A stretch of 64,000 nt of DNA from Mytilus edulis. Taxonomy: Eukaryota. The notes under the pieces were generated by a model that worked only from the letters and a program-made list of their open reading frames with translations, did not search any database and was not told the origin of the DNA. The stretch's first letter is position 1, and the number at the start of each line of letters is the position of its first letter. Shown piece after piece: positions 4,701-22,486 of this stretch. Location of the stretch: positions 30,938,001 through 31,002,000 of the forward strand of contig NC_092351.1 of assembly GCF_963676685.1 (NCBI RefSeq). Reading direction: 5' to 3'. Both the position numbers and the translations under genes were made by a program.

Positions 4701-7700
4701 CAATTGTCCGATTCTTCTGAAATTTCAGGGCAGATAGATATTGACCTGATAAACAATTTAACCACTGTCAGATTTGCTCTAAATACTTTGGTTTCAGAGT
4801 TATAAGCCAAAATCAACATTTTACCCCTATGTTCTATTTTTAGCCATGGCGGCCATCTTGGTTGGTTGGCCGGGTCACCGGACACATTTTTCAAACTAGA
4901 TACCATAGTGATGATTGTGGCCAAGTTTGGTTAAATTTAGCTCAGTAGTTTCAGGAGAAGATTTTTGTAAAAGTTAACGACGACGGACGCCGGACGACGG
5001 ACGCCGGACGACGGACGCCAAGTGATTGGAAAAGCTCACTTGGCCCTTTTAAAAAGTAAAAAAAAACAAACACTTAACAATAAAAAAAAAAAAAAATAGC
5101 AATAAAATTAAGACAAACAACAGTCTATATAACTTAAATATCTAAATCAATTTTAAATAAAAACTGAGCAATACGATCCCCACAAAAAACGGGATAAACT
5201 CAGAAGCTCATGAAAATTCAACAGCTGGTTCTATTCTTATATATTTTTTGTAAATAGCATGATTGATTTAATATAGATGACCATGATGTTGCAACCGTAT
5301 ATTTACTTTTAAATATCTGCATACTAACTAGGTAGTTAGACGAAGTTTTGTAAAACAGACCTTTGGCTCCTTTCACGTTAAATCTTGCAAGTAATGAATT
5401 TAAGAATGGAAGTTTTTAACGACCTTGACTGTCTATACACCCCTTGCACGGTTAGCATAATGAATTTGTTGCTGATTTGGAACAATATATATGCACATTT
5501 GTAGCATTATATGTTGTTGTTGATTTAGAGGGACACATATATATATAATAAATGTTTATAATATGGTTAAGTTTATGTATACATCTATTTTTTTTATTTA
5601 GCTACTCAGCCCGCCGGTGTAACCAAAGGAAGTGTATCAACCAGAACGACGGAATCACAAGACCCTGATATATGTGATATATGCAAAATGCACCCTGGAG
5701 TTCCTGGTGATAATGATTATCATATAATTGTTCGTAAGTTGCATTTCTTGGAATGTCTAGTCCCTTCTGTAGACCTGCCTGTCTTCTTCATTTACGTTTT
5801 CATAGTGATGCAGCTAAGATACTTTTCCAATCAGTGTACCTTTAACAGTTTCCTAGATATATCTCCCAGATATGTTCAACGCATATATCTTCGTATGTGT
5901 CTTTTTATGCCCCATCTACGATAGTAGAGGGGCATTATGTTTTTTGGTCTGTGCGTCCGTTCGTTCGTGGTACCGTCCATCCGTCTGTTCGTCCGTTCGT
6001 CTGTCTGTCCCGCATCAAGTAAAAGTAAAAGGTTTTGGTCAATGTAGTTCATGATATGAAGTTGAAGTCTAATCAACTTGACATATGATACACATGTTCC
6101 CTATAATATGATCCTTCTCATTTTAATGCCAAATAAGAGTTTTTAACCCAATTTCACAGTCCACTGAACATAGAAAATTTAAGTGCGATTGGGACATCTG
6201 AGTAATTTGGACACATTCTTGTTTTAGTTGTTTGTTATCCCAATCATTTACACTGCACAAGGTATATACAAACGTCCGGCAGAATTTTGGAAAACATGAT
6301 TTTCTGGTGGATGTACACGAGACAACAATAAAAAAAATCAAACTATCATTGCTTTCTTCTTATAATAGTTGTTAGTTTTTTTCTTCTCTACCGATGTGTA
6401 GGCAAGAAAATTGGTTAACTACAAACGTGAAAGGAAATATCTCAAAAACAAGTGTGTCCATTTGAAACTTTTGGTTCAATCTATAATTACCATGAACTCT
6501 TTAATTTAGTTTACCCACTAATTTAGATTACGTTAAGGATCTGTGAATAACATAATCAGAAATATAAGGCTTTGTTTCAGAGAGACTATATTTCTGTTCT
6601 CCGAAAAAGCCAAAAACAATACACTTAAAAGTAATCAAATTTTGATCGCTTAAACATTTATTTATATTATCTACATTTTTTCTGTGGCATTACAAATACT
6701 GTTCCGTTTATTTCCCACATCAGAGTCATAGTAGTTTTACCAGCTATTTGGCGGAATCAGAATTTATAACTGCATTCAATGTGACATAAAATGAAAAAAT
6801 AAAGTTATAGTGCATATTTTTTTTATATGAATTAAATATAAATTGATTAGTATTATATGTATAACATTTGAATTTTTTTTAGATGCAGATGACCCTGCAC
6901 AAAGTAAGTATATTTGAATTAAGTGAAATATTGCATAGTACAGAATATCCTAAAATATTTACAGTCGCATAAGAGGAATGGGGTACCCTGACATTTTACA
7001 ATTATGGAGAGAGTTTAAAACAAATTTAACTGAATTGATTCTGTTATGCAAGTTATTCTTATTGCTCAAAACAATCCTCAGCGAAAAAAACAGAAGTATG
7101 AACTAGCAAAAGAAGAAATTGAAAAGAATTAGGAAATCTAAAATTAAAGATATCTGAAACTTATCATATTGCATTCGCAAGCTCTTGCAATGATAAACTG
7201 CTCCCGAAATTCGTCCGCAATATTAATAACTTAAACATGTATAAAGGTTCTGTTTTCAAACTTTCCTTTCAAATATTTATGACAAATATATTATTTGCAA
7301 TAATCATTTTGCGTGATATGTTTATCAAAATGTTTATGTATTACAGTTCCCGCGGACCCACCCCAGGTACCTATTCCAGTCCCTAAAGTTGGGTGTGGAA
7401 TACCTCCAGAGTGCCCTGGCTTTTATGAAGACTCTCGGTGTGTTCCGATAATTGTACCTACACCAATTGAGATATTCTGCCAGTTCTTCTTGGATAATTT
7501 GGAAGTACCAGTGGGAAAAAAACGAGGAGTTCCAGTACGAGGCGATCGTGTATTGAAAGAACTGATGACTAGACACAAAAAGAAAAAGGGAAAAAAGAAA
7601 GGACATTATTGGAAACCAAAATCTGGTTCTGGTTCTGGGTCTCATTCTGCTGAAGAGAATGTATGTTCATGTCCGGAATTCGATGTATTGATTACAGCGT

Positions 7701-7732: not shown

Positions 7733-9917
7733 GCTTCAACAACACTCTCTCAACTTTTTAGTATTTCATAGCTCATGCTTTTTTTGCTTTAACTATATTG
7801 CTGTTACGAAAATATAAAGACAACACAAGTTTTGGACGATAAAATGATTGCAAATTAATAGAGATCATCTTGGTTCAATCGTCTCAATTGAACCAATTGT
7901 ACTTACGTTATTTAAGAGGCGGATTAAGGGGCAAGGTGCTCAACTCCTTTTGTTGTTGACTATTTAAGGAATCACTGCATCACATGCCACTTCTTATGGT
8001 AGTCAGTGCCTTATAAAAATTTCTGGTCTGCCACTGATAAATCCATTTCTCGGTGCTAATTGCCTAGCTAATTATTATGTATAGAATATGCATCTATATG
8101 GTTAACTCATTTGTATGAAGATCTGGATTACAGAATCGTAAATAAATGGACCCGACAAATAAATTATTAAGAAAAAAAGCAAAAACGAAGAAAAGAAAAT
8201 CAGGGGTTGCTAAAATATATGATGGTGAAGATTAGAAAATTATCGCCAAACAAATACAGAATATTGAAAATACCAAAAGTATAATAGAAAAGAAGACCCC
8301 CACCGCAAAAAAAAATAAAAAAAAAAAAATAAGCCCTCTTTCAGACCTTTCGCGTATCCGTTGCTTTAAAATATTCCGCCTGAGCATCTTCGTTAAATTT
8401 TACTCATAGTACTAGCTACAACTTTAATGTATGGTGTGTGTGACACGTGTTTATTTTCAATATGTTTTTTTAAAGCAAAGCTAATTCTGATCAAGTCATG
8501 AATATGATACTTGTTATCAATTTGTTTGGTGCGTTTGATGTGTTTGGGTTTTTGCCATATGACACATGTTATCGTATTTTTTATTTGTTTGATTTGTTTG
8601 AGTTTTTGATTTTGTCATTTGATTAGGGACTTTCCGTTTGGATTGTCATCGGTGTTCAGATTTTTTTTTGTGATTTTACTTTCTACATATGTTGACCGAA
8701 AGTACACCAAGGTATTAAAACTTGTGATTTAGAAAAAAAACTTTCAAAGAATTCGTATTTTCACATTTTTATAAACTTGTTTGTTATTTTGCATTTTTTT
8801 CTTTCTGTTCATTGCTATAGTAATAAATAGTTGTGCATCTATCGGTTTGTTTTGGTTTTATTGTTAATAATACAATTACAAGTTACACAAGTTTATATAT
8901 ACCTCAAAGTACACACGTCAAAATTTTCTTAGATTTTCAACGATTGGCCATACAATGCATAAATAAAACAAATATAAAAACAAAAGTAACCTGACTTATA
9001 TTCCTAAATATGGTAAGTGCTTTTAACGAATTTAATTCCTCAGAAATTTTGAGAAAAAAAAAGAGAAATTTTAAGGATCTTAAGGTCGTTAGTTATTGAG
9101 AACGATAGGTTTTGAGTCGATATTTATTGTGTCAATATTTTTTGTGTCGATAGTTTTGAGAACGATAATTTTTGAGGTGCTGATGCCTTCATAAAGTTGC
9201 ATATTACTGCTTTGTAATAACAAATATGCTTACCGAAGATCATCACTATGAGCTAGACAATGATCAGCTTGACCTGAGGTTTTTAAAGCCTTCACGGGTA
9301 TGCTGGGTGAAATCAGGAACACAAATTATTCAGTGATTCACTCATAAAATACACAAATACGCGGTAACCCGATAGATTAATTTTCAAATTTAATCATAAT
9401 TAAATGATATAGCAGCCGTCAGTATAGGTTTTCAGAAGACTTCCACGAATAATTATCAGCAATACAAAAATCAAAATAGAGATTTTATTCTATCAAGAAT
9501 AATATTCTATTTGTAGAGTGTTCATTGTTGAAGATGCACATAAAGCTATGTACTTTAGTAGGTGAGCGACACAGACTTTTTAAAGCCTCAAGTTATAAAC
9601 ACTTGGATCCTACCTTAAATAAGATAAATCCAGACTACTTATACACATATGAATATCCCATTTGTTACAAGTAGATATTTGAATTCTGATTTGTAGTGAA
9701 GTAAATTAGTATAAATCCGAATTCCATTTTTTACTTGTACATGTGTAGTAGGAGGATTCATGATCTTAATGCAATCCAATGTGTGCTGTAACATGTGCAT
9801 CCGGAAGTGTCTTGAGCTTAATAGAAGACGCATTTTCAGATAAACTTATTACACATCCTTGCTATACGTATACATTATTTCGGGTTTGTCCTGGTACCTT
9901 TGATTACTATTTACACC

Positions 9918-9975
9918 ACTGGGTCGATGCCACTGCTGTTGGACGTTTCGTCCCCGAGGGTATCACCAGCCCAGT
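9918..9975 (+). ncRNA. Conserved 58-nt pseudoknotted RNA motif of unknown function (retrozyme copy)
   Basis: Gapless homolog of the minus-strand motif in the 157-bp array, with 6 compensatory base-pair changes. Confidence 0.65.
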
Positions 9976-10186
9976 AGTCAGCACTTCAGTGTTGACATGA
10001 ATATTAACTATATGGTCATTTTAAAAAAAATTCTGTTACAAAGCTTCGAAATATTCGAAAAACTAAGGATTTTTTTATCCCAGGAATAGATTACCTTAGC
10101 CGTATTTGGCACATTTTTTTGGAATTTTGGGTCCTCAATGCTCTTCAACTTAGTAATTGTTTGGCTTTATAACTAGATTGATCTGA

Positions 10187-10226
10187 GCGCCACTGAAGAG
10201 TCTTATGTAGACGAAACGCGAGTCTG
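10187..10226 (+). ncRNA. Type I hammerhead ribozyme (3' arm of stem I truncated)
   Basis: CUGAAGA at 10193-10199, stem II GUCU/AGAC, GAAA at 10213-10216, GUC site ending at 10224. Confidence 0.75.
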
Positions 10227-10933
10227 TATCAAAGAGATTGATACCCAACTCAACAAGAATGTGTCCATAGTACACGGATATTCCAAGCACTATAATTTTC
10301 TATGTTCAGTGGACCGTGAAATTGGGGTCAAAACTCAAATGTTGCTTTAAAATTATAAAGATCATATAATAGGGAACATGTGTACTAAGTTTCATGTTCA
10401 AAACTTGGAACATCCAAATGAAACATTCAGATATCTATCCAGTATCGTTTTGACAAACCTTCATGGAACTTTATGAAATAAGGGCAGAATCTTCTTTATG
10501 ATAAAAAGACATTATCGACAGCAGCATTTTGAAACTACTGTTATTTTTTTCATTTTCCGTTTTCATGAATAAATATATCTTTTTTGTCGAGCCTTCGACT
10601 TTTGTCGAAAAAGCGAGACATAGTGATCCTAAATTCCGTCGTGGTCGGCGTCCACAAATATTCACTCTGTGGTTAAAGTTTTTGAAATTATAAAAACTTT
10701 CTTAAACTATCCTGGATTTCTACCAAACTTGGACAAAAGCTTACTTATGATCATAAGATGTTATACAAATGTTGCCATTATTTTATGACAGCTAATGTTT
10801 ATGTATGCATAGTAATTTCTGAACATCTGTTGATGGATCAAACCAACAAAACAGGAGGTCATAAGGTGACATAAGTGGTATGAACAAGCTAGTTTGTTTT
10901 TTGAGAGTTAAAACATATAGTGACTTTAATATG

Positions 10934-11015
10934 TATCAAAGGTACCAGGATTATAATTTAATACACTAGAAGCGCATTTCGTCTACACAAGACTCATCAG
11001 TGACGCTCAGATCAA
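10934..11015 (-). mobile_element. Second retrozyme copy with degenerate hammerhead (10963-11007), split by later insertions; continues at 12276-12334 and 20328-20356
   Basis: Minus strand reads gcgtca-CTGATGA-gtct tgtgt agac-GAAA-tgcgcttc. The downstream pieces match the plus copy (10091-10185) contiguously once the insertions are removed. Confidence 0.75.
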
Positions 11016-12275
11016 ACTAGAGGCTCTCAAGAGCCTGTATCGCTCACTTGACTCTACTTGGGTTTTTGAAATCATATAAAAAAAGATAAAATTTGGCTAC
11101 AAAGTTACAAAACTTGGTCAGCACCTCATAAGGAACAATAATGCTATGTTGGGTTCCATTCCATTCAGTGGTTCTCTAAAAGAAGACTTTTGTATGCATT
11201 TCCCATAGGGTCCTATGTTAAACTAAACCCCCCGCTGGCGGCCATCTTGGATGATGGATCGGCTACAAAGTAACAACTCTTGGTCAGCATCTCATAAGAA
11301 ACATTTATGCTATGTTTGATTTCATTACATCAAGTGGTTCAATTTGAATGTATTTCCCTTAGGGTCCTATGTTAAACAAAGTCCACCAACTGGCGACCAT
11401 CTTGGATGATGGATCGGCGACAAAGTAACATCACTTTGTCAGCATCTCATTGGGAACATTCATACTATGTTTTGTTTCATTCCATTCAGTGGTTCACTAA
11501 AAGAAGACATTTGTATGTATTTCCCATATTGTCCTACGTAAAACTAAGTCCCCTGCTGGCAACCATCTTGGATGATGGATCGGCTACAAAGTAACAACAC
11601 TTGGTCAACACTTCATAAGGAACATTCATGCCATGTTTGGTTTTATTCCATTCAATGGTTCTTTAGAAGAAACCATTTGTTTGCATTTCCCATAGGGACC
11701 TATGTTAAACTAAGTCCCCCGCTAGTGGCCGTCTTGGATGATGGATCGGCTACAAAGAAACAACACTTGGTCAGCACCTCATAAGGATCATTCATGCCAT
11801 GTTTGGTTTCATTCCATTCAGTGGTTCTCTAAAAGAAGTCATTTGTATGCATTTCCCAAAGGGACCTATGTTAAACTAAGTCCCCCGCTGGCGGCCATCT
11901 TGGATCATGGATCGGCTACAAAGTAACAACACTTGGTCAGCACCTCATTAGGGACATTCATGCCATGTTTGGTTTCATTCCATTCAGTGGTTCTCTAAAA
12001 GGAGTCATTTGTATGCATTTCCCATAGAGTCCTATGTTAAACTAAGTTCCCAGATGGCAGACATCTTGGATGATGGATCGGCTACAAAGTAACAACACTT
12101 GGTCAGCATCTCATAAGGAACTTTCATGCCATGTTTGATTTTATTCCATTCAGTGGTTCTCTAGAAGAAGTTCAAAATGTAAAATGTTGACGACGACGAC
12201 GACGGACGACGGACGTCAGACGACGAACCCAAAGTGATGAGAAAAGCTCACTTGGCCCTTCGGGCAGGTGATCTA
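11016..12275 (-). mobile_element. HINE-like element (family A) carrying ~6.5 copies of a 166-bp satellite
   Basis: Terminal hairpin aggctc-tcaa-gagcct, 166-bp period (11406, 11572, 11738), ggcggccatcttgg core, GAC microsatellite, gctcacttggcc...caggtga end. Confidence 0.8.
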
Positions 12276-13228
12276 AAAAGTTATAAAGCCAAACAAATAC
12301 AAAGTTGAAGAGCATTGAGGACCCAAAATTCCAACTTAAGGCTCTGAAGAGCCTGTATCGCTCACCTGACTACTTGGGTTTTTGAAATCATATAAAAAAA
12401 GATAAATTTGGCTACAAAGTAACAACACGTAGCCAGCACCTCATAAGGAAAGGAACATTCATATGTTTGATTTCATTCAATTCAGTGGTTCTCTAGAAGG
12501 AAACTTTTGTATCCTATATTAAACTAAGCCCCCCCCCACCCCCCCTTCCCCGCTAGTGGCCATCTGTGATGATTGATCGGCTACAAAGTATCGACACTTG
12601 GTCAGCATCTCATAAGGAACATTTATGCTATGTTTGGTTTCATTCCATTCAGTGGTTCTTTAAAAGAAGAAATTTGTATGTATTTCCCATAGGGACCTAT
12701 GTTAAACTATTAAGTTCCCCCACTTGCGGCCTTCTTGGAAATTGGATCGGCGACAAAGTTACAACACTTGGTCAGCATCTCATTAGGAACATTCATGCTA
12801 TGTTTGGTTTCATTCCTTTCAGTGGTTCACTAAAAGAAGACATGTGTATGTATTTCCCATAGGGTCCTATGTTAAACTAAGTCCCCCGCTAGCAGCCATC
12901 TTGGATGATGCATCGGCTACAAAGTAACAACACTTGGTCAGCACCTCATAAGGAACATTCATGCTATGTTTGGTTTTTATTCCATTCAGTGGTTCTTTAA
13001 AAGAAGTCATTGTGCTATTTTTAATTAATTAAAAATATATAATTGGCGACTAGAGTTAAAGAAATAGACTTTATACTGTTCGAATTATTTCGGTTCTTTA
13101 CATACAGCTAATGATACAACTTGTTATGAATTTTATAACGTAACAATGCATTCTGATTGGTTCCTTTATATACTTGTGATTTAAAGAATTTTAAGTTTTT
13201 TATTCTGCCGTCGATATCCGAAAACTAA

Positions 13229-14319
13229 AATCAGCGAAAAGAAAAGACACCAGCGACTCCAAAAGTGTTAAAAGGAAGGGTGAGATCAATTTAGACAAAT
13301 TAAGAAAAAAGAAAGTGTTGACTAAATTAGTAGAGAAACAATTATCAGATATTTTAAAAAAGAATAATTTAATAGATTTAGTTGATTCTAGTGAAATTCC
13401 TCATGGTTGTTCTACTAGTGAGCATGATTTTTCTTCGCATTTACGCAAACGTAAAAACAAATCTTTGAAAAAGAAGAGTTCAAAAGTTCCTTTACAATAT
13501 TCTGATTCCGATTCGGACGACAATATTCATGTCCCGAAGGTTTAATCGGCTAAGGCCAAAAAGTTTAAAAAGTCGGGTAGCTCCAGGGTGACAAAACACA
13601 AGTCAAGAGTAATATCAGAGTCATCTGATAGTTCTGACTATGATGCATTCGAGTCTAGTACTGATGATGATACTTAAAGTACATCAGGTACAGATTCGTC
13701 CTGTAAAAAGAAATCACTTAAAAAGCGAAAGGTTAATCGGGTATGGTTGCTAAAGCAAGCGATGACGTGCAGAATCCACAAACTTGGCCCCATACTACAC
13801 TTCAGTACGAATATATAAATAAATCTGTTTCATTTCAAGATTTAGATTTAAAGCTGTTTGTTGCAGGGGAATTAGAAATAATTGGATCAAGCAAAATTAA
13901 AGCTATCGAGAAAATTACTAGATTGTCCCTTTTGAAGAAAATTCTATATTACAGTTCCATTTATCAGTGGAAATCTTTACTTGACTTCTATGCTGCCTTT
14001 TTGAGACAAATTGAAACGGGTGCTAAAACCTGGAAAGATACTCCTGATAATTTGGAAGTTCCTCTTTTATCTAAATATGTCAAACAAGAGTTCGATAAGA
14101 AGCATTCTTTTGGGGCTAAAAAAAGAGACCAAGACACATACTTTATGGTATTGTTCGTTATTTCAGAAAAATAAATGTTCAAAAACATCACCGCATAAAA
14201 TTCTGATTAGAGGTGTTGAACGTGAGGTTAATCATTTTTGTGCCACTTGTTATAGATTAGACAAACTTAAAAGTCATCATCCTGAATGTTCGTCTGCATG
14301 TCCTCATCATAATGAATGA
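13229..14319 (+). pseudogene. Ngaro gag-like ORF (5'-deleted, frameshifted, with stops)
   Basis: Lys/Ser-rich N-terminal part, then WPHTTL..FVAGELEII..FYAAFLRQIE. The C-terminal Cys/His zinc knuckle (CSLFQKNKC..H..HFCATC..HPE..C) is in a different frame. Confidence 0.75.
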
Positions 14320-14409
14320 CTAAATCAACATGTTCAGTTACCTGATTTTCAAAAGACATTATGGGGTTCTAGACATTCACTTAAATGCAGTCTTTGTTGT
14401 AACAGTTAT

Positions 14410-16089
14410 TTGGGTATAGATGATATGCAAAATTTTGTATCTATTCATAACATTGTTAAAAAATCTGGATTGTACAATTTTCAGGGTTGTAGAATTCCAA
14501 TTTACTCTAAAATCAATATTCTTTTTTTAAGAAGTTTGTTACAGAATTACAGTGACGCTCAAGTTTGTGACTTTTTAGAGTATGGATGGCCGGTGGGTCA
14601 CGATGGGAGCCCGTTCAGGTCATCTTTTTCCCGTAATCATTCGGGGGCTGATTTTCCAGATGATATTGCCAAATATTTGAAAAAAGAAAGTTCTTATAAA
14701 GCAATTGTTGGACCATTTAAGGCAAATCCGTTCAGCTGTCCGTCAGCTTTGTCTCCTTTAAATTCCGTTCCTAAAAAGGATTCAACAGAACGCAGAATTA
14801 TTGTTGATTTGAGCTTTCCAGAGGGCGAGGCGGTTAATTCTGGTATTTTCAAAGATCGTTATTTAGGCGATGAAATTTCAGTTTCGTATCCCACGGTTGA
14901 TGATTTTATTATGTTAATTAAGAGTAAAGGTCAAGGTTGCAGAATGTTTAAGAGGGACCTGAAACGGGCTTATAGACAATTAGTCGTTGACCCCGGTGAC
15001 ATCCATCTCTTAGGTTACAAATGGAGATGACACTTGTTTTACGATCGTGTATTAACAATGGGGTTGAGATCTGCTGCATATATATGTATGCGAACAACAA
15101 ATGCTATTGCATTTATATGTCAAAACATGGGTATAGATATTTTGAACTATTTAGATGATTTGGCTGGATGTGATATTCCTTCCAGCAGTGATGATGCTTA
15201 TGCTAAATTGGGTCTTATTTTACAGAATTGTGGCATTGAAGAATCAATTGAGAAGGCTTGTCCGCATAGTACTAAAATGATGTTTATTGGCATTTTATTT
15301 GATTCTGAGAACATGACAATTTCTATTGATACTCAAAGATTGTCAGAGATTCTGCAGTTAGTTTCTAATTGGCTCTGTAGCACAAATTGTACAAAGAGAG
15401 AATTACAATCATTGCTGGGAAAATTAAATTTTGTATCTCAATGTGTGCGTTCTGGCCGAATTTTTGTGTCAAGGCTGTTAAATTGGTTAAGAGATTTTCC
15501 CGATAATGGGAAAATAGTAATTCCAACTGATTTTAAACGTGATTTATTCTGGTGGCAGGAATTTTTGCCTAGTTATAATGGGATTTCTATGATTTTATCT
15601 GATGAATTCTCAAACCCTGATCAATTGTTTTCTGTTGATGCATGTTTGACAGGATGTGGCGGATAAATGGACGGAAGATACTTTCACTGTTCATTTCCGG
15701 AGTTTATTTTAGATCAAAACTTGCATATAAATTTATTAGAGATGTTGACGATTGTAGTAGCCTTGAAATTATGGGGAAAACATTTCACAAATTTAAAGGT
15801 GATTATTTATTGCGATAATATGGTATCAGTACGTGTTTTGAATACAGGCGCCACCAGAAATGAGTTCCTGCAGTAGTGTTTGAGGGAAGTTTGTTGGATT
15901 GCAGCTGTAAATAATTTTGAGTTAAAAGCTAAACATATTTCAGGTTGCAATAATCGTTTACCAGATCTTTTGTCTAGATGGGATTTAGATTATAAATTTC
16001 AGTTAGACTTTTACGAGAGGACAAAAGGCATGTCCCTATTTAGAGATTTGATTTCTAAAGAATTGTTTCAGTTTGAACATATTTGGTAA
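14410..16089 (+). pseudogene. Ngaro reverse transcriptase/RNase H with 3 in-frame stops
   Basis: RT motifs RIIVDLS, KRDLKRAYRQ, MGLRSA, YLDD. RNase H motifs VDAC, HINLLEM, CDN, HISG.NN..PDLLSR. Stops at 15028, 15664 and 15874. Confidence 0.9.
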
Positions 16090-17082
16090 TTGTTTATTCG
16101 TGTATTTGTAGATTTGCAAGTACTAAGACGAGATATGTTTGTGACTAGGATTTCGGCTTTCGCGAAAGGTACTTTGGTTAATTTTAAAACGCAGTGGAGA
16201 GCTTATTTATTGTTTTGTAATTACTTTCATTTAGAACCGTTTGATATTGATTCTGAATTATTATGCACTTATTCCGAGTTTCTCAGTAGAAGTTTCAGAT
16301 CAGCTCAATCTATTCGCAATTATTTAAACGGAGTTAAAGTTCTTTTCCTGTTGTTAGGATTACATGTGGATGTTTTTTCGTCTTACGAATTGAAGTTGAC
16401 GATGAAAGGGTTAGATAGGAAATTAAAACATTTACCTAAACAGGCATTTCCTATTACTTTAGAAATTTTAGGAAAAATTCGTGAACATTTGAATTTGAAT
16501 ACGCCGCTAGATGCGACATATTGGTGTTTATTTCTTTTTGCTTTATTACTTTTAAGCAGGAAGTCTAATTTAGTTCCAGTATCAACCAAGAAATTTGACA
16601 AAAATAAACAACTGTGCAGATGTGATGTTACAGTCTTTCCGTCTCTTATAATAGTTGCATTCAAATGGACAAAAACAATTCAGTTGGGTAATCGTATTTT
16701 AAGGATACCTTTGCTTGCATATCCTCTATCTAAATTTTGCCCAGTAAATGCATATAAAAGGATGTGTTCTTTAAATCCTTGCACGTCAGATGATGCCGCT
16801 TTTTCTTGTAAAAAAAGGGGGAAATGCATACCAATTACTTATAACCAGTTTCAGAATAAACTGAGAGAATTACTTTGTAAAATTGGGTTAAATCCAAATT
16901 TATTTTCTTCCCATAGTTTCCGAAGAGGTGGAGCAACGTTGGCACCGAAAGCAGGGGTTTCTCCTAGTTCTATCCAATTGATGGGTGATTGGAAAAGCAA
17001 TTGCTATACTAAATATATTGTCAGTTCTTTGTCTGATAAAATCAATGTAGCGGAACAAATTAAAGACTTTGTTTTAAAATAA
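16090..17082 (+). CDS. Ngaro tyrosine recombinase
   Basis: Open 330-codon frame with catalytic R (SRKSNL), K (KWTKT), HxxR (HSFRRGG), W (GDW) and Y (TKYI). True start uncertain. Confidence 0.9.
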   Translation: MFIRVFVDLQVLRRDMFVTRISAFAKGTLVNFKTQWRAYLLFCNYFHLEPFDIDSELLCTYSEFLSRSFRSAQSIRNYLNGVKVLFLLLGLHVDVFSSYELKLTMKGLDRKLKHLPKQAFPITLEILGKIREHLNLNTPLDATYWCLFLFALLLLSRKSNLVPVSTKKFDKNKQLCRCDVTVFPSLIIVAFKWTKTIQLGNRILRIPLLAYPLSKFCPVNAYKRMCSLNPCTSDDAAFSCKKRGKCIPITYNQFQNKLRELLCKIGLNPNLFSSHSFRRGGATLAPKAGVSPSSIQLMGDWKSNCYTKYIVSSLSDKINVAEQIKDFVLK

Positions 17083-17085
17083 AAT

Positions 17086-17601
17086 TTGCTCTTTATAGAT
17101 TTTAGGTCTACTCTGGTGTGCGATTCCATAGCCAAGCATGTTAAAACTATTAGAAGGTGTCACTTGCAAGCCTTTCCTGGAGCAAATATTTGGGACATGA
17201 TCAATTTGCTTAATTGTGGAACAATTCAGGTAAATTATGATATAATTCTGATGCATGTAGGAACCAACAATGTTTTTGCTGATTTTGATATAGGCTATAA
17301 TGTGCTTATCTCTACAATTGAGAAATTAGTTAAGCCACATACTGTCATAGTTGTTATGTCAGCAATTATTCCACGCTTACTTGATTTTCAGAATACAAGT
17401 TATTTTGTCACTACTATTAATTCTAGATTAAGAGGTTTATGCTTTAAACGTGGTGTTCAGTTTGTAGCTACTTATAAACCTTTTTTAAAGTTTGGGATGC
17501 CAGTTTGTGAACTTTATTCACCCATCTGTAAGTTACATTTGAATTATTTTGGTAATTTAAAATTGACAAATTTTTTTGTTCAAGTATTGTCTCATTGTTA
17601 A
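17086..17601 (+). CDS. SGNH/GDSL-type hydrolase-like ORF of the Ngaro element
   Basis: Block I (V)CDSI, block II FPGA, block III HVGTNN, block V CKLHLN. No ATG upstream of the Ser motif. Confidence 0.8.
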   Translation: MLFIDFRSTLVCDSIAKHVKTIRRCHLQAFPGANIWDMINLLNCGTIQVNYDIILMHVGTNNVFADFDIGYNVLISTIEKLVKPHTVIVVMSAIIPRLLDFQNTSYFVTTINSRLRGLCFKRGVQFVATYKPFLKFGMPVCELYSPICKLHLNYFGNLKLTNFFVQVLSHC

Positions 17602-17708
17602 ACAAGAGGATGTTAAGTCTCATCTTGTTACTGTTAAACAGAAGGAGCAATCTTATTCTGTGCCTTTTTTGTCTAATTGTGCTTATCCTTAAGGGAACAT
17701 TTTGTTTC

Positions 17709-17892
17709 CTGGCCAATCTTGTCAGAAAGATCTGACCATTCATGTCAGTGGTATTGTTTGATATCTGACCATTCATGTCGGTATTATTATACGTATTTGT
17801 TAGAAATATCTGAACAATCATGTCAGTGATATTTTTTTATTTCTGAACATTCATGTCAGTGATATTTTGTGATTTCTGACCATTCATGTCAG
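17709..17892 (+). repeat. Six spaced palindromic CTGAC-N7-GTCAG motifs in the Ngaro 3' region
   Basis: Copies start at 17709, 17732, 17765, 17810, 17844 and 17876; consensus ctgaccattcatgtcag. Confidence 0.8.
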
Positions 17893-18731
17893 TATTTTCA
17901 TTATTTTTGCTTGTAACTTAAATAGCTTTTAAATTTTGTTTAATATCAATCAATGTGCGTTAGTTACTGTTTGGCTGTTGGGGTTTTTGGTGCTGAACAT
18001 TGATTGGATTAACTTTAACGTCTATTATAGTTTTTTCATATGAAATTGTAATAATTTGCCAAAATTAAATGTTTTATTTTAATTCGTTTTAATTCCTACT
18101 GAGCATTTATTTAGTATTGCTTTGCATCCAGTCGTCTCATATCTTTAATAAATCTGCGTCTATTTACTTCGAAAGAGCAAATTGTGCTATTTTTGATTAA
18201 TTAAAAATATATAATTGGCCACTAGAGATAAAAGAAATAGACTTTATACTGTTCGAATTATTTCGGTTCTTTACATACAGCTAATGATACAACTTGTTAT
18301 GAATTTTATAACATAACAATGCATTCTGATTGGTTCCTTTATATACTTGTGATTTAAAGAATTTTAAGTTTTTCATTCTGCAGTCGATAGCCGAAAACTA
18401 ACCCTCCCATTATTTATCCCACCAAATATTTATAATCAGTAGTTTCAGTCTCATTTTCTGTGAAAGTTTTATTTTTCAGCGTATGTTCCTTGCCGGTGTT
18501 ACTGTGGATATACGAATTTACAATATAATCGACTGATTAAAGGACAATAAAGGAGCAATAGAGTTTATAACCGATAATTTGGATACGGATTAATTCACAA
18601 TGGTGTAGATGTTAGATTTATCGTTGCCCGCTGAATATAGACGTGCGGTCAAAGTGTTGTTGATGAATGGTGGTGCTGAACATTGATTGGATTAACTTTA
18701 ACGTCTATTATTGTTTTTTCATATGAAATTG

Positions 18732-19596
18732 TAAATAAAGGCAACAGTAGTATACCGCTGTTCAAAACTCATAAATCCATGGACAAAAAACAAAATCGGG
18801 GTACTAGTTTTCATGCTGTTAGGCTACCGGACTGGTAGAATCCTCGGGGACAGATTGTCCACCAGCAGAGACTCCGGTCCGGTGGTGATAAATAAAGGCA
18901 ACAGTAGTATACCGCTGTTCAAAACTCATAAATCCATGGACAAAAAACAAAATCGGGGTACTAGTTTTTATGCTGTTAGGCTACCGGACTGGTAGAATCC
19001 TCGGGGACAGATTGTCCACCAGCAGAGATTCCGGTCCGGTGGTGATAAATAAAGGCAACAGTAGTATACCGCTGTTCAAAACTCATAAATTCATGGACAA
19101 AAAACAAAATCGGGGTACTAGTTTTCATGCTGTTAGGCTACCGGACTGGTAGAATCCTCGGGGACAGATTGTCCACCAGCAGAGATTCCGGTCCGGTGGT
19201 GATAAATAAAGGCAACAGTAGTATACCGCTGTTCAAAACTCATAAATCCATGGACAAAAAACAAAATCGGGGTACTAGTTTTTATGCTGTTAGGCTACCG
19301 GACTGGTAGAATCCTCGGGGACAGATTGTCCACCAGCAGAGATTCCGGTCCGGTGGTGATAAATAAAGGCAACAGTAGTATACCGCTGTTCAAAACTCAT
19401 AAATCCATGGACAAAAAACAAAATCGGTGTACTAGTTTTCATGCTGTTAGGCTACCGGACTGGTAGAATCCTCGGGGACAGATTGTCCACCAGCAGAGAT
19501 TCCGGTCCGGTGGTGATAAATAAAGGCAACAGTAGTATACCGCTGTTCAAAACTCATAAATCCATGGACAAAAAACAAATTCGGGGTACTAGTTTT
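18732..19596 (-). repeat. 157-bp tandem array (5.5 units) inserted in Ngaro repeat B2, each full unit carrying the 58-nt pseudoknot motif
   Basis: Near-identical units with period 157 (18813, 18970, 19127, 19284, 19441). Absent from B1. Motif in the first unit is 18826-18883 (-). Confidence 0.95.
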
Positions 19597-22486
19597 AAAA
19601 TTTGCCAAAATTAAATGTTTTATTTTAATTCGTTTTAATTCCTACTGAGCATTTATTTAGTATTGCTTTGCATCCAGTCGTCTCATATCTTTAATATATC
19701 TGCGTCTATTTACTTCGAAAGAGCAAATTTGTATGAATTTCCGATAGGGTCCTATGTTAAACTAAGTCCCCCACTGGTGGCCATCTTGTATGTTGGATCG
19801 ACGACAATGTAACAACACTTGGTCAACATCTCATAAGGAACATTCATGCTATGTTTGATTTCATTCCGTTCAGTGGTTCTCTAAAAGAAGACATTCATAT
19901 CGGTCTTTTGATGTCCTTAAGGACTAAAAGTCTGCATTTGTATGTATTTCCCATAGTGTCCTATGTTGAACTAAGTCCCCCGCTGGCGGCCATCTTGGGT
20001 GATGCATTAGCTACAAAGTAACAACACTTGGTCAGCACCTCATAAGGAACATTCATGCTATGTTTGGTTTCATTCCATTCAGTGGTTCTCTAAAAGAAGT
20101 CATTTGTATGCATTTCACATAGGGTCCTATGTTAAACTCAGTCCCATGCTGGCGGCATCTTGGATGATGGGTCGGCTACAAAGTAACGACACTTGGTCAG
20201 CACCTCATATGGAACATTCATGCTATGTTTTGTTTCATTCCATTCAGGGGTTCTCTAAAAGAAGTCATTTGTATGCATTTCCCATAGGGTCCTATGTTAA
20301 ACTAAGTCCTTCCGGCCAGGTGAGCGAAAAAGTTGTTCCAAATGCGTCTAAGGTAAAAGCGTATTTATAGTAAGTTACTATATTGTATGGGCTTTGCTAA
20401 TTTTTGATACTGATGGATTTATGTCATTGGCAGAGATACCATCTTCTCAGTTTTGTTAACATACCTTTTGAGGCATACAGAAGATTCAATTAGTGCAAAT
20501 AAAGCAGCAAACCAGATTTAGCCACTAATAACAAGCATTTCATGATAGAGGGGATGACACACTTGGGATGTGGGGTAAAGAGGTTAAAAAAATGGGGATG
20601 TAGGAATCAGCTTCCACATACAGATGCTGGATTCATGTATCTAAGACCATGTTCGTGATCATTGTGTACTAGTTTCATAACATTTGGTTGAGACAAACAT
20701 AAGTTAGAGAACAAAAAAGGCAGATTTAGCAATTTTTCCATTTATAAAGGGGCATAACTAAAGAACAGTAAAGGTGATGCCACACACTACTGATCTGTGT
20801 TTTGTGGTCATAAGCATTGTGTATAAGTTTTATAGTATTTGGTTGAGGCAAACTAAAGTTAGAGAACAGAAATATTCAACATTTTGTTTATGTTTATAAA
20901 GGTACATAACTCATGAAAGGTAAGTCATGCCACCTAATTTCAAATTTAAGTTGTGTTTTGTGGTCATAAGCATTGTGTATAAGTCTTAAAGTATTTGGTT
21001 GAGGCAAACTAAAGTAATAAAATGCAAACCAATTTTTCTGATGTTCTGTACGGACTAACATCAGTAACACCTAAGCAAACTATAATACAGTAGGGGCATA
21101 CAATACATAGGATCTTGGAAAATGAAAGTAAAATGTGAAGTGGGAAAAATTACACAAAAAAAAGCTGGATTTAAGAAATCAGAATCCCTGTGTCACAATA
21201 TTAAGGTAATCCAACCATACATGAGAATGAGTTCAATTGTTTACAATTACTTTTAGTTTTGTTTAGGCTAAATTAGTAAGAGTAAAAGTGATTCTTTTTT
21301 CATGTTTTAATTCAGTAAAGGTTCTATTGTATAGTATATAAATTATTGACAATCTTATCAACTTTTAAAACAAATATAATATAACACACATAGCACACAA
21401 ATGACTGCCTTAAAATTGTTTACTGAGGGCAAAATAAAATATAACTCGGTTTCTGTACCTTGTATAACCATTTCATCAAGCATTCTTGAACCAAGAAAAT
21501 TTGAGAAATTAAAAACGGTTAAGAAAAAATATTTAAAAATATAAATTATGTTGGTCTAACTACAACCATAAGACAATAACAATCATACTGTTTAATGCAA
21601 CCAATGTTTAAAAGAACAGGTTTATCATAAAATGCAGGTATAAGCTTAAGATAGCAAACAAATATAATAAATAATATCAATTTGGTATTAATTACATTTG
21701 AATAAAATGAATAATTCTATTTTTAAATATAAAATAATAATGAAAACAAAAACGTAAAACGAAATGTATATAAGATTTCATACTTGGATATTCAATTGTC
21801 CTATTATTTTATTTTTTTCAACTATTTTATAAAATACAATATAAAGTAACATTTTGCAAATGACATTAATCTATAATGCTAAATGAGGACAATAAATATC
21901 TTAGCACCATCAGGATATATATAAATGATATGTTCTAATACATTATTGTTTGCAATATACAATTTGACATGAAGTCAACACATCATTTATTCATAAAAAA
22001 GTTGTCTGCACCAAGGAAAGGTCTTTAAAAGAAATAAAGTTGTTTACATTTTGGTATAATTTAATTTCAGATGTAACACTTCTTCTCATTGGAGCTTTTT
22101 GTCTATCAGCTCATAGACGTAATTTTGTCATTTGACCATGATGTCATCAATGTTATTTTTAATGATATACACCTTTAAGACGAAATAAGAATTAAATTAT
22201 AAGGAATGACTGTAATATTTTTTCTATCTATTCAAAATAACCTAAAATATATGGTGCACAATGAATAACCCAAGTAACAGGTTATTTATAAGTGTGCACC
22301 ACATTAGACAGAAAAAAATATTGCAGTCATTCCTTAAATAACATCAGGATAAGACATTCAAAGTACAGCAATTTCCATCAAAAAAGTATAAAGTTTAAAT
22401 TTGTTATATTTTTAAAATAAATGTACATATGTTATCAACTTTGATAAATCACTTTGCGTATACTGTAAAAAGATTATATCATTTAA

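What the first reader, a model, noticed from the sequence alone, without database searches (positions are those of the whole stretch)
18732..19596. 157-bp x 5.5 array looks like a rolling-circle product of a minimal retrozyme lacking a hammerhead
Seen: near-identical head-to-tail units with a partial terminal unit, present in Ngaro B2 but not B1, so it is a single young insertion with no clear TSD. Neither strand has a CUGANGA core. Each unit carries the pseudoknot motif and an imperfect aacag..ctgtt hairpin. Established: metazoan non-LTR retrozymes occur as short tandem arrays derived from small circular RNAs and normally carry a self-cleaving motif in each monomer. Inference: this is a ~157-nt circRNA family processed by a different activity or dependent on the retrozyme machinery. 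A Helitron-type origin is the alternative.
Basis: partly seen in the sequence, partly recalled or inferred. Interest (0 to 1): 0.8.

Follow-up and report, generated by a model that had tools for sequence, protein, structure and literature searches.

The report
Tandem mini Penelope-like (Naiad) retroelement array
The 157-bp tandem array is a stripped-down, non-coding copy of a Penelope-like retrotransposon of the ribozyme-free Naiad type. It keeps only that element's two ends and is inserted head-to-tail, so it is a ribozyme-less cousin of animal "retrozymes", with no sign of a new circular RNA.

Summary
Window 18732-19596 is 5.5 head-to-tail copies of a 157-bp unit at 98% identity. It lies in direct repeat B2 but not B1 of a tyrosine-recombinase (Ngaro-like) element. 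It has no clear target duplication, no CUGANGA core and no Rfam ribozyme.

The unit is not a new kind of RNA. Read on the window's minus strand, it is the first 86 nt joined to the last 70 nt of a 4.75-kb autonomous Penelope-like element (PLE) of the Naiad type. That element encodes an N-terminal GIY-YIG nuclease, CxC and DKA motifs and a C-terminal reverse transcriptase, and it has about 11,000 3' ends in this genome. Naiads are known to lack hammerheads, to form head-to-tail partial tandems, to be heavily 5'-truncated and to leave unclear duplications.

Seven such mini-arrays (periods 150-296 bp, six or more different deletions) all stop at the PLE's 3' terminus and all start 5'-truncated. 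The exact 157-bp deletion junction occurs at only two loci. Three RNA-seq runs gave no read across it. An alternating C/T variant argues against a monomer circle as template.

The mussel 358-bp hammerhead retrozyme shares the 5' hairpin module and a 3'-UTR module with this Naiad.

Verdict: a new member of a known kind, of moderate interest.

The parts
18732..19596 (-). Head-to-tail array of 5.5 copies of a 157-nt internally deleted (non-coding) Naiad-type Penelope-like element. The sense strand is the window's minus strand. The element's 3' terminus is at 18732 and the 5'-truncated first unit is at 19596.
   Evidence: array; each unit = parent 1-86 + 4680-4749; left end equals the parent's 3' terminus.
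18732..18803 (-). 3' module of one unit: the last 70-72 nt of the parent PLE. It recurs every 157 bp. RNA-seq reads that cover it continue into the parent's 3' UTR or into varied AT-rich flanks.
   Evidence: The 31-mer inside it has 11,120 genome matches.
18743..18762 (-). Short 3'-terminal hairpin (AACAG / CTGTT stem, 10-nt loop) about 11 nt from the element's 3' end. It is kept in all seven mini-arrays, whose smallest retained 3' part is 43 nt. It is a candidate recognition site for the reverse transcriptase (inferred).
18802..18803 (.). Deletion junction (a shared TA) where parent position 86 meets parent position 4680. It is diagnostic of this 157-nt derivative and recurs every 157 bp.
   Evidence: A 29-mer across it has 8 genome matches: 5 here and 3 at C5:12075359-12075700.
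18802..18888 (-). 5' module of one unit: parent nt 1-86, meaning the 73-nt 5' UTR plus the ATG and 10 nt of the open reading frame. The ATG is CAT at 18812-18814 on the plus strand and is mutated to ATA in units 2 and 4. Zero RNA-seq depth was seen here.
18826..18883 (-). It is shared, with compensatory changes, with the 358-bp hammerhead retrozyme.
   Evidence: fold z-scores -1.95 sense, -3.5 antisense; 23 pairs, 6 with changes on both sides.
18888..18889 (.). Head-to-tail junction: the PLE 5' start abuts the PLE 3' end. It is the same junction as in the parent's pseudo-LTR arrangement.
   Evidence: c1 8304, c12 7144; 82 such junctions in the genome.
13009..19729 (+). Host element: a degenerate tyrosine-recombinase retroelement with split direct repeats (Ngaro-like). 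The repeats are A1 13009-13228, B1 17988-18183, A2 18181-18401, and B2 18671-18738 plus 19593-19729. It is itself inserted in a 166-bp satellite.
   Evidence: Pfam Phage_integrase E=2.2e-5, GDSL-like hydrolase E=1.6e-5, weak RVT_1 E=0.05.
17988..18183 (+). B1, the empty-site reference. The insertion point corresponds to about 18052-18054 (TTGTAA|TAATTTGCC).

Best explanation
The array is a non-autonomous, internally deleted derivative of an autonomous Naiad-clade Penelope-like retrotransposon (PLE). It is inserted antisense into repeat B2 of a Ngaro-like element.

**Shown**
- Each 157-nt unit, read on the window's minus strand, is parent nt 1-86 (the structured 5' UTR plus the first codons) joined at a TA microhomology to parent nt 4680-4749 (the 3' terminus with a small hairpin).
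- The array ends exactly at the PLE 3' terminus.
- The array begins with a 5'-truncated unit.
- The parent family has thousands of 3' ends, about 90 5' ends, and almost always a head-to-tail junction upstream of a 5' end.

**Inferred**
- The mini-element RNA, probably a multimer transcribed from an earlier array, was copied in trans by the Naiad reverse transcriptase after the GIY-YIG nuclease nicked an AT-rich target.
- Copying started at the 3' terminus.
- Head-to-tail units arise by the usual PLE habit of running from the 5' end of one template onto the 3' end of the next, possibly enlarged later by unequal exchange.
- No ribozyme is needed, because Naiads do without one.
For: **The unit's relation to the parent**
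- The unit occurs once, with homologous flanks on both sides, in more than 40 dispersed copies of a larger element.
- That element is about 4.75 kb and stands in tandem or pseudo-LTR form.
- Its 1004-aa ORF starts inside the unit on the minus strand.
- Mapped on the 4751-nt parent, the unit is positions 1-86 plus 4680-4749.

**The parent is a Naiad PLE**
- GIY-YIG at residues 135-223, upstream of a weak RVT_1 match at 750-854.
- Motifs DCSCAS (CxC), GPKY, PADKAS (DKA) and YIDD are present. They match the Naiad diagnostics in PMC8557442.
- 91 homologues of about 1000 aa carry PF01541 and/or PF00078, including bivalve (Pinctada) reverse-transcriptase proteins.

**Insertion signature**
- The window array's left end equals the parent's 3' terminus at three independent parent loci.
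- Arrays on C5, C7, C3, C2, C4 and C6 all stop at that terminus and start at different phases.
- Genome counts: 11,120 matches for the 3' 31-mer, 90 for the 5' 31-mer, 82 head-to-tail junctions.
- The same deletion junction sits at a second locus with unrelated flanks.

**No ribozyme**
- No hammerhead or other Rfam ribozyme was found in the array, the parent or the sister arrays.

**Published Naiad traits that match**
- No canonical hammerhead.
- Pseudo-LTRs and partial tandems.
- Strong 5' truncation.
- TA-rich targets.
- Unclear target duplications.
Against: - Trans-mobilisation is inferred, not shown. This exact derivative has only two insertions in the assembly.
- No RNA from the mini-element was detected, so current activity is unproven.
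- Only the C2 array shows a convincing target duplication (13 bp) with a roughly 29-bp tail. The window insertion has at most a 3-bp overlap.
- The share of copy number due to later DNA-level unequal exchange cannot be separated from that due to reverse transcription.
- The GIY-YIG Pfam score is 0.1 bit below the gathering cut-off (22.5 against 22.6), and the RT Pfam match is weak. The clade call therefore leans on motifs read by eye and on homologues' domains.
Confidence: 0.85

Rival explanations
1. A 157-nt circular RNA, made by an unknown cleavage and ligation activity, is reverse-transcribed by rolling circle, and the multimeric cDNA is integrated.
For: - The units are near-identical and head-to-tail with a partial terminal unit.
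- A conserved structured hairpin is present.
- Related hammerhead retrozymes of mussels are known to make abundant circular RNAs (PMC7229834).
Against: - No self-cleaving motif was found.
- Zero RNA-seq depth on the 5' module and no read across the deletion junction in three runs, with about 4.4 thousand million letters read.
- The strictly alternating C/T at column 81, with both variants also present at the C5 locus, is not what a monomer circle gives.
- All arrays end at the linear PLE 3' terminus.
- Full-length Naiads form the same head-to-tail junction without any circle being needed.
Confidence: 0.07
2. Only one or two units of the mini-element were inserted. The rest of the array grew locally at the DNA level by unequal crossing-over or replication slippage, as satellite birth from a transposon end.
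For: - The alternating C/T pattern fits duplication of a two-unit block.
- The 2026 preprint proposes local amplification for PLE-derived tandem repeats.
- Copy number differs between the two loci with the same junction, 5.5 against 2.9.
Against: - Both C and T variants are already present at the second locus, so a multi-unit source predates at least one of the insertions.
- All seven arrays, including short ones, have the same polarity of a truncated 5' unit and an intact 3' end. That is what multi-unit reverse transcription gives directly.
- Multicopy head-to-tail insertions are described for non-autonomous relatives, the Chlamys elements.
Confidence: 0.25
3. A Helitron-borne or extrachromosomal-circular-DNA-borne satellite, made by rolling-circle DNA replication of a captured fragment.
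For: - Tandem arrays inside Helitron-like elements are common in bivalves (own knowledge).
- The array has one fixed end.
Against: - The flanks of four independent arrays share nothing and show no Helitron termini.
- The fixed end is the 3' terminus of a reverse-transcriptase-encoding element.
- No Rep/helicase gene is associated.
Confidence: 0.02

Closest known systems
Naiad clade of Penelope-like elements (Craig, Yushenova, Rodriguez & Arkhipova 2021, PMC8557442)
   Same: - The parent has the N-terminal GIY-YIG domain, the CxC, GxKY and DKA motifs and a C-terminal reverse transcriptase.
- It shows pseudo-LTR and partial tandem structure and massive 5' truncation.
- It has no canonical hammerhead.
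- It inserts at AT-rich targets with unclear duplications.
- It is highly abundant in a bivalve-type genome.
   Different: - The window holds no ORF. It holds only a 157-nt derivative made of the two termini, repeated 5.5 times.
- The parent is 4.75 kb, slightly above the 3.4-4.4 kb quoted for Naiads. Its 1.66-kb 3' UTR carries 242-bp repeats and a decayed hammerhead-like stretch.
Non-autonomous Chlamys elements such as MRC1 of Chlamydomonas (PMC8557442)
   Same: They are non-coding derivatives of N-terminal-nuclease PLEs. [quoted passage not shown]
   Different: - The host here is an animal and the clade is Naiad.
- Here both the 5' (81 nt or more) and the 3' (43 nt or more) termini are retained.
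- The unit is far shorter.
Metazoan non-LTR retrozymes (Cervera & de la Pena 2020, PMC7229834; Li, Clavereau & Pollet 2026 preprint, 10.64898/2026.07.22.740005)
   Same: - Both are short (150-400 bp) tandem non-coding repeats related to PLE terminal regions.
- In this genome the 358-bp hammerhead retrozyme shares the 5' hairpin module and shows the same fixed 3' end with variable 5' truncation.
   Different: - No hammerhead is present in the unit.
- No detectable RNA, linear or circular, was seen in the runs examined.
- Copy number is tiny: two loci, against more than 15,000 hammerhead copies.
Internally deleted non-autonomous transposons in general (MITEs from DNA transposons; SINE/LINE partnerships)
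   Same: The unit keeps only the cis-acting ends and depends on an autonomous partner's proteins.
   Different: It is RNA-mediated, and it is arranged in head-to-tail arrays as a by-product of PLE integration.

Membership tests
Penelope-like element, Naiad clade (applies to the parent of the unit) | GIY-YIG endonuclease N-terminal to the reverse transcriptase in one ORF | tested here: met
   Pfam GIY-YIG at residues 135-223 (E=1.4e-4; 22.5 bits against a 22.6 cut-off). RVT_1 at residues 750-854 (E=0.011). Homologues carry PF01541 and/or PF00078.
Penelope-like element, Naiad clade (applies to the parent of the unit) | CxC motif, GxKF/Y motif and DKG changed to DKA | tested here: met
   DCSCAS, GPKY and PADKAS were read in the translation, against the diagnostics quoted. 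They were read by eye and not aligned to the published set.
Penelope-like element, Naiad clade (applies to the parent of the unit) | Pseudo-LTR / partial tandem insertions and strong 5' truncation | tested here: met
   4750-bp tandem on C12 and a 576-bp pseudo-LTR on C1. 11,120 3' ends against 90 5' ends and 82 head-to-tail junctions.
Penelope-like element, Naiad clade (applies to the parent of the unit) | No canonical hammerhead ribozyme | tested here: met
   No Rfam hit in the parent loci. Only a decayed core was found, mostly CTGGTGAG, with the GAAA lost.
Non-autonomous PLE derivative (applies to the array) | Non-coding unit that shares the autonomous element's termini and ends at its 3' terminus | tested here: met
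   The unit is parent 1-86 plus 4680-4749. The array's end equals the parent's 3' end.
Non-autonomous PLE derivative (applies to the array) | Copied as a unit to more than one locus | tested here: met
   An identical deletion junction occurs at C8 (the window) and at C5, with unrelated flanks. These are the only two loci.
Non-autonomous PLE derivative (applies to the array) | Mobilised in trans by the PLE proteins | not testable with these tools
   This needs a retrotransposition assay.
Metazoan non-LTR retrozyme | Type I hammerhead ribozyme in each monomer | tested here: not met
   No Rfam match at E<=10. No CTGANGA on either strand.
Metazoan non-LTR retrozyme | Abundant linear and circular RNA of monomer length | tested here: inconclusive
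   Zero depth on 18808-18888 and no junction-spanning read in three RNA-seq runs. Standard libraries may lose 157-nt RNAs, and only 6-18% of each run was read.
Metazoan non-LTR retrozyme | Short tandem repeats of about 170-400 bp related to PLE ends | tested here: met
   The 157-bp period is slightly below the published range. The PLE relation is shown.
Helitron / Helentron-borne satellite | Conserved Helitron termini around the array, with a Rep/helicase partner | tested here: not met
   The flanks of four arrays are unrelated and lack such termini.
Local slippage minisatellite | Unit unique to the locus | tested here: not met
   The unit is dispersed.

The most novel reading that the evidence does not exclude
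The 157-bp array and the 358-bp hammerhead retrozyme of this mussel-type genome are two outcomes of one process: internal deletion of Naiad-type PLEs that keeps a structured 5'-UTR hairpin and a 3' end.

If so:
- Mussel retrozymes are non-autonomous Naiads, a clade reported to lack hammerheads.
- The hammerhead is dispensable for making and moving tandem mini-PLEs.
- The natural deletion series (5' 81 nt or more, 3' 43 nt or more) maps the minimal cis requirements of PLE retrotransposition.
- Retrozyme arrays are set by a PLE-type 3' terminus about 55 nt past the ribozyme, not by the ribozyme cut.
Probability: 0.5. Interest if true: 0.55.

Novelty: new member of a known kind. Interest (0 to 1): 0.38.

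Why it matters
The array itself is an ordinary piece of transposon biology, but it is a clean example.

- **Tandem arrays without a ribozyme.** A PLE reduced to 86 + 70 nt still ends up as head-to-tail arrays at new sites with no self-cleaving ribozyme. This bears on the open question of what hammerheads do for PLEs and retrozymes.
- **A candidate map of cis-acting ends.** Seven independent deletion derivatives retain the same two ends. Together they give a ready-made, testable map of the cis-acting sequences of a Naiad element, whose integration mechanism is still poorly understood.
- **A link to retrozymes.** The side observation that the abundant mussel hammerhead retrozyme shares both modules with this Naiad would, if confirmed, tie invertebrate retrozymes to a specific autonomous partner.

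Tried and rejected
- **Rfam scans.** Gathering and E-value scans of the window, the array region, seven related loci and a 10-kb parent locus found no ribozyme and only chance or microRNA-like hairpin matches.
- **tRNA scan.** None found.
- **Helitron reading.** Rejected on flanks and on the parent's coding capacity.
- **Local slippage.** Rejected because the unit is dispersed.
- **Array carried by other Ngaro copies.** Rejected: the flanks of the other arrays do not match the window's.
- **Target duplications.** A search around seven arrays found only one convincing case, on C2.
- **Solved-structure sequence search of the parent ORF.** Nothing useful.
- **Protein Atlas.** Unavailable for this sequence.
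- **Tool-format errors, corrected and repeated.**
- **Not attempted.** I did not find an autonomous Naiad with an intact hammerhead and a retrozyme-type 3' end. Only 1 of the first 100 listed Naiad-type copies has CTGATGAG.

Full report
**1. The observation**

Tandem Repeats Finder reports 18732-19596 as a 157-bp period in 5.5 copies, with 98% matches, no indels and score 1688 (sequence). The six units differ at only five columns.

The array sits in a tyrosine-recombinase retroelement with split direct repeats:
- A1 is 13009-13228 and A2 is 18181-18401, at 96% identity.
- B1 is 17988-18183.
- B2 is 18671-18738 plus 19593-19729.
- Pfam supports the element type: Phage_integrase E=2.2e-5, a GDSL-like hydrolase ORF E=1.6e-5, and weak RVT_1 E=0.05.

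Aligning B1 with the two halves of B2 shows that the array is an insertion in B2. B1 reads TTGTAA|TAATTTGCC, and B2 reads TTGTAA[array]AAAATTTGCC. At most a 2-3-bp overlap is shared.

No Rfam family matches the window at gathering score or at E<=1, nor the array region at E<=10. Neither strand holds CTGANGA.

**2. The unit is dispersed, and it is a piece of a larger element**

A search of the window's own genome (1.37 Gb) with two units gave three kinds of match:
- other arrays on C5, C7 and C3;
- a 279-bp array on C2;
- more than 40 single 159-nt matches at 97-99% identity on many chromosomes.

The single matches have homologous flanks on both sides. Homology extends more than 1.5 kb on one side and about 0.6-0.77 kb on the other. 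Only the 159 nt are shared with the window.

The larger element is about 4.75 kb. It stands in tandem on C12 with a 4750-bp period, and with a 576-bp pseudo-LTR on C1.

**3. The parent is a Naiad-type Penelope-like element (PLE)**

The parent carries a 1004-aa ORF on the strand opposite to the window's plus strand. Its ATG lies inside the unit: it is CAT at unit positions 11-13 on the plus strand.

Domain and motif evidence:
- Pfam finds GIY-YIG at residues 135-223 and a weak RVT_1 at 750-854.
- The translation shows DCSCAS (CxC), GPKY, PADKAS (DKA) and YIDD.
- These features, together with the N-terminal position of the nuclease, are the diagnostics of the Naiad clade (PMC8557442).
- 91 homologues of about 1000 aa carry PF01541 and/or PF00078. 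The named ones are bivalve reverse-transcriptase proteins.

The same paper states several Naiad properties:
- They dominate bivalve genomes.
- They form pseudo-LTRs and partial tandems.
- They are strongly 5'-truncated.
- They prefer TA-rich targets.
- They often leave no discernible duplication.
- They lack canonical hammerheads.

**4. Anatomy of the unit**

On a 4751-nt parent reference in the sense orientation, each window unit is parent 1-86 plus parent 4680-4749, joined at a shared TA. The first part comprises the 73-nt 5' UTR, the ATG and 10 nt of ORF.

The head-to-tail junction between units is the same junction that the parent forms between a pseudo-LTR and the full copy.

The array's left end in the window (18732) is the PLE's 3' terminus. 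Three independent parent loci end at the same bases. The right end (19596) is a 5'-truncated unit.

**5. A family of mini-arrays**

| Locus | Parent positions kept | Period (bp) | Copies |
|---|---|---|---|
| C8 (the window) | 1-86 + 4680-4749 | 157 | 5.5 |
| C5 | 1-86 + 4680-4749 (same breakpoints) | 157 | 2.9 |
| C2 | 1-208 + 4677-4749 | 279 | 11.6 |
| C6 | 1-218 + 4673-4749 | 296 | about 3 |
| C4 | 1-192 + 4707-4749 | about 236 | about 3.3 |
| C7 | 1-102 + 4707-4749 (locally duplicated) | 150 | 2.4 |
| C3 | diverged copy | – | – |

All of these arrays stop at the parent's 3' terminus. They start at different internal positions: 14, 45, 126, 140, 195 and about 76. Their flanks are unrelated.

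Only C2 shows a clear 13-bp duplication, with a roughly 29-bp tail. Such a tail is described for PLEs.

Genome counts with up to 2 mismatches:

| Sequence searched | Matches |
|---|---|
| 3' 31-mer | 11,120 |
| 5'-UTR 31-mer | 90 |
| Head-to-tail junction | 82 |
| 157-type deletion junction | 8 (5 in the window, 3 on C5) |

The derivative has therefore been copied to a second site, but it is rare.

**6. Mechanism**

A fixed 3' end, variable 5' truncation and head-to-tail units are what target-primed reverse transcription by a PLE gives. Non-autonomous relatives (Chlamys elements) are reported to make multicopy head-to-tail insertions.

I infer trans-mobilisation by the Naiad reverse transcriptase and nuclease. 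I also infer that the retained ends carry the cis signals. Across the series these ends are at least 81 nt at the 5' side and at least 43 nt at the 3' side, the latter including the AACAG/CTGTT hairpin.

Column 81 alternates C, T, C, T, C along the window array. Both variants occur in the C5 array, and the site is not a CpG. This fits a multi-unit template or duplication of a two-unit block. It does not fit rolling-circle copying of a monomer.

**7. RNA**

Three raw RNA-seq runs of a species holding the unit were laid on 18400-18888.
- Depth is in the hundreds on 18732-18803, the PLE 3' module.
- On one side, the reads there run on into the parent's 3' UTR (loose-end consensus ACAAACTAAAACCGAGGG...).
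- On the other side, they run into heterogeneous AT-rich flanks. This is read-through of thousands of truncated copies, on both strands.
- Depth is zero on 18808-18888, and no read crosses the deletion junction.

This gives no support for an abundant 157-nt RNA. There are caveats:
- only 6-18% of each run was read;
- standard libraries may lose small RNAs;
- with about 90 copies of the 5' module against 11,000 of the 3' module, little signal is expected from passive transcription.

**8. Relation to retrozymes**

The window also holds pieces of the abundant 358-bp hammerhead repeat, at 9911-10216 on the plus strand and 10919-11020 on the minus strand. The core reads CTGATGAGTCTTGTGTAGACGAAA. 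A 30-mer of that core has 15,567 genome matches, often at 357-358-bp spacing. This matches the mussel retrozyme of 350-390 bp in PMC7229834.

That unit is built on the same plan as the 157-nt unit:
- Its first 75 nt or so align to the Naiad 5'-UTR hairpin. Of 23 predicted pairs, 6 show changes on both sides that keep the pair.
- Its last 258 nt or so align to parent 3978-4243 in the 3' UTR, with 74.7% identity over 241 nt by BLAST.
- In the Naiad the hammerhead core is decayed. It is mostly CTGGTGAG, the GAAA is lost, and there are about 1,094 such copies.

Seven retrozyme arrays all stop at unit position 356-358 and begin at variable positions.

The 157-nt unit and the retrozyme share the 5' module, and probably the same kind of autonomous partner.

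A 2026 preprint argues that vertebrate retrozymes are non-autonomous PLE derivatives (10.64898/2026.07.22.740005). I did not find the mussel retrozyme-Naiad link stated in the papers I read.

**9. Verdict**

The array is a new member of a known kind: a non-autonomous, internally deleted Naiad PLE inserted as a head-to-tail array.
- The missing hammerhead is inherited from a hammerhead-less parent clade. It is not a sign of a new processing activity.
- The circular-RNA and Helitron readings are not supported.
- Interest is moderate. It rests mainly on the natural deletion series and on the retrozyme-Naiad lead.

I tested its covariation. Another note (s1-838049) records a hammerhead retrozyme array near a Penelope-type ORF elsewhere in this genome. 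I did not test that one.

Noticed in passing
window 9911-10216 (+) and 10919-11020 (-): These are pieces of the abundant 358-bp hammerhead retrozyme repeat in inverted orientation (53-nt arms 10173-10225 and 10968-11020). The hammerhead cores are CTGAAGAGTCTTATGTAGACGAAA at 10193-10216 and CTGATGAGTCTTGTGTAGACGAAA at 10977-11000. Rfam does not call them, even at E<=1. A 30-mer of the core has 15,567 genome matches.
   Followed up: partly
L043:1099-2077, L044:1094-2669, L045-L049; parent reference positions 1-75 and 3978-4243: The 358-nt hammerhead retrozyme unit aligns at its 5' end to the Naiad 5'-UTR hairpin (6 compensatory pairs of 23). Over its last 258 nt or so it aligns to the Naiad 3' UTR. 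Seven retrozyme arrays all end at unit position 356-358 and start at variable phase. This suggests that mussel retrozymes are internally deleted Naiad-type PLEs.
   Followed up: partly
Parent Naiad, sense positions about 4148-4185 (for example L032/L036 copies); about 1,094 genome copies: The Naiad 3' UTR carries a decayed hammerhead homologous to the retrozyme ribozyme. The core is mostly CTGGTGAG (also CTAGTGAG and CTTGTAAG), and the GAAA is replaced. Only 1 of the first 100 listed copies has CTGATGAG.
   Followed up: partly
L034:5124-8348 (G000:C2:95561124-95564348): A 279-bp x 11.6 array at 99% identity is made of a second mini-Naiad (parent 1-208 + 4677-4749). It keeps the first 43 or so codons of the ORF. 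It is flanked by a 13-bp duplication (AAGTTCAAGCATG) with a roughly 29-bp extra tail at the 5' side.
   Followed up: yes
window 11064-13045 and 19608-20304: A 166-bp satellite (10 or more copies, 71-90% identity) is interrupted by the Ngaro-like element 13009-19729. The satellite resumes right after B2.
   Followed up: no
window 18402-18670: About 270 bp lie between A2 and B2 of the Ngaro-like element, with no counterpart next to A1 or B1. The origin was not examined.
   Followed up: no
window 17086-17601 (+): This ORF has a GDSL/SGNH-hydrolase-like match (Pfam PF13472, E=1.6e-5). It lies downstream of the tyrosine-recombinase ORF, as reported for some Ngaro elements (own knowledge).
   Followed up: no
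L007:1859-1944 (G000:C3, beside a diverged mini-array): A near-perfect 86-nt inverted-repeat hairpin scores as MIR405-like on both strands (E=1e-7, below gathering). It is probably a MITE-type palindrome.
   Followed up: no
G000:C10:74485323, 74517336, 74554516, 74587047: Four full-length Naiad 5' ends are spaced 32-37 kb apart on the same strand and have near-identical flanks. This suggests a large segmental tandem duplication carrying the element.
   Followed up: no
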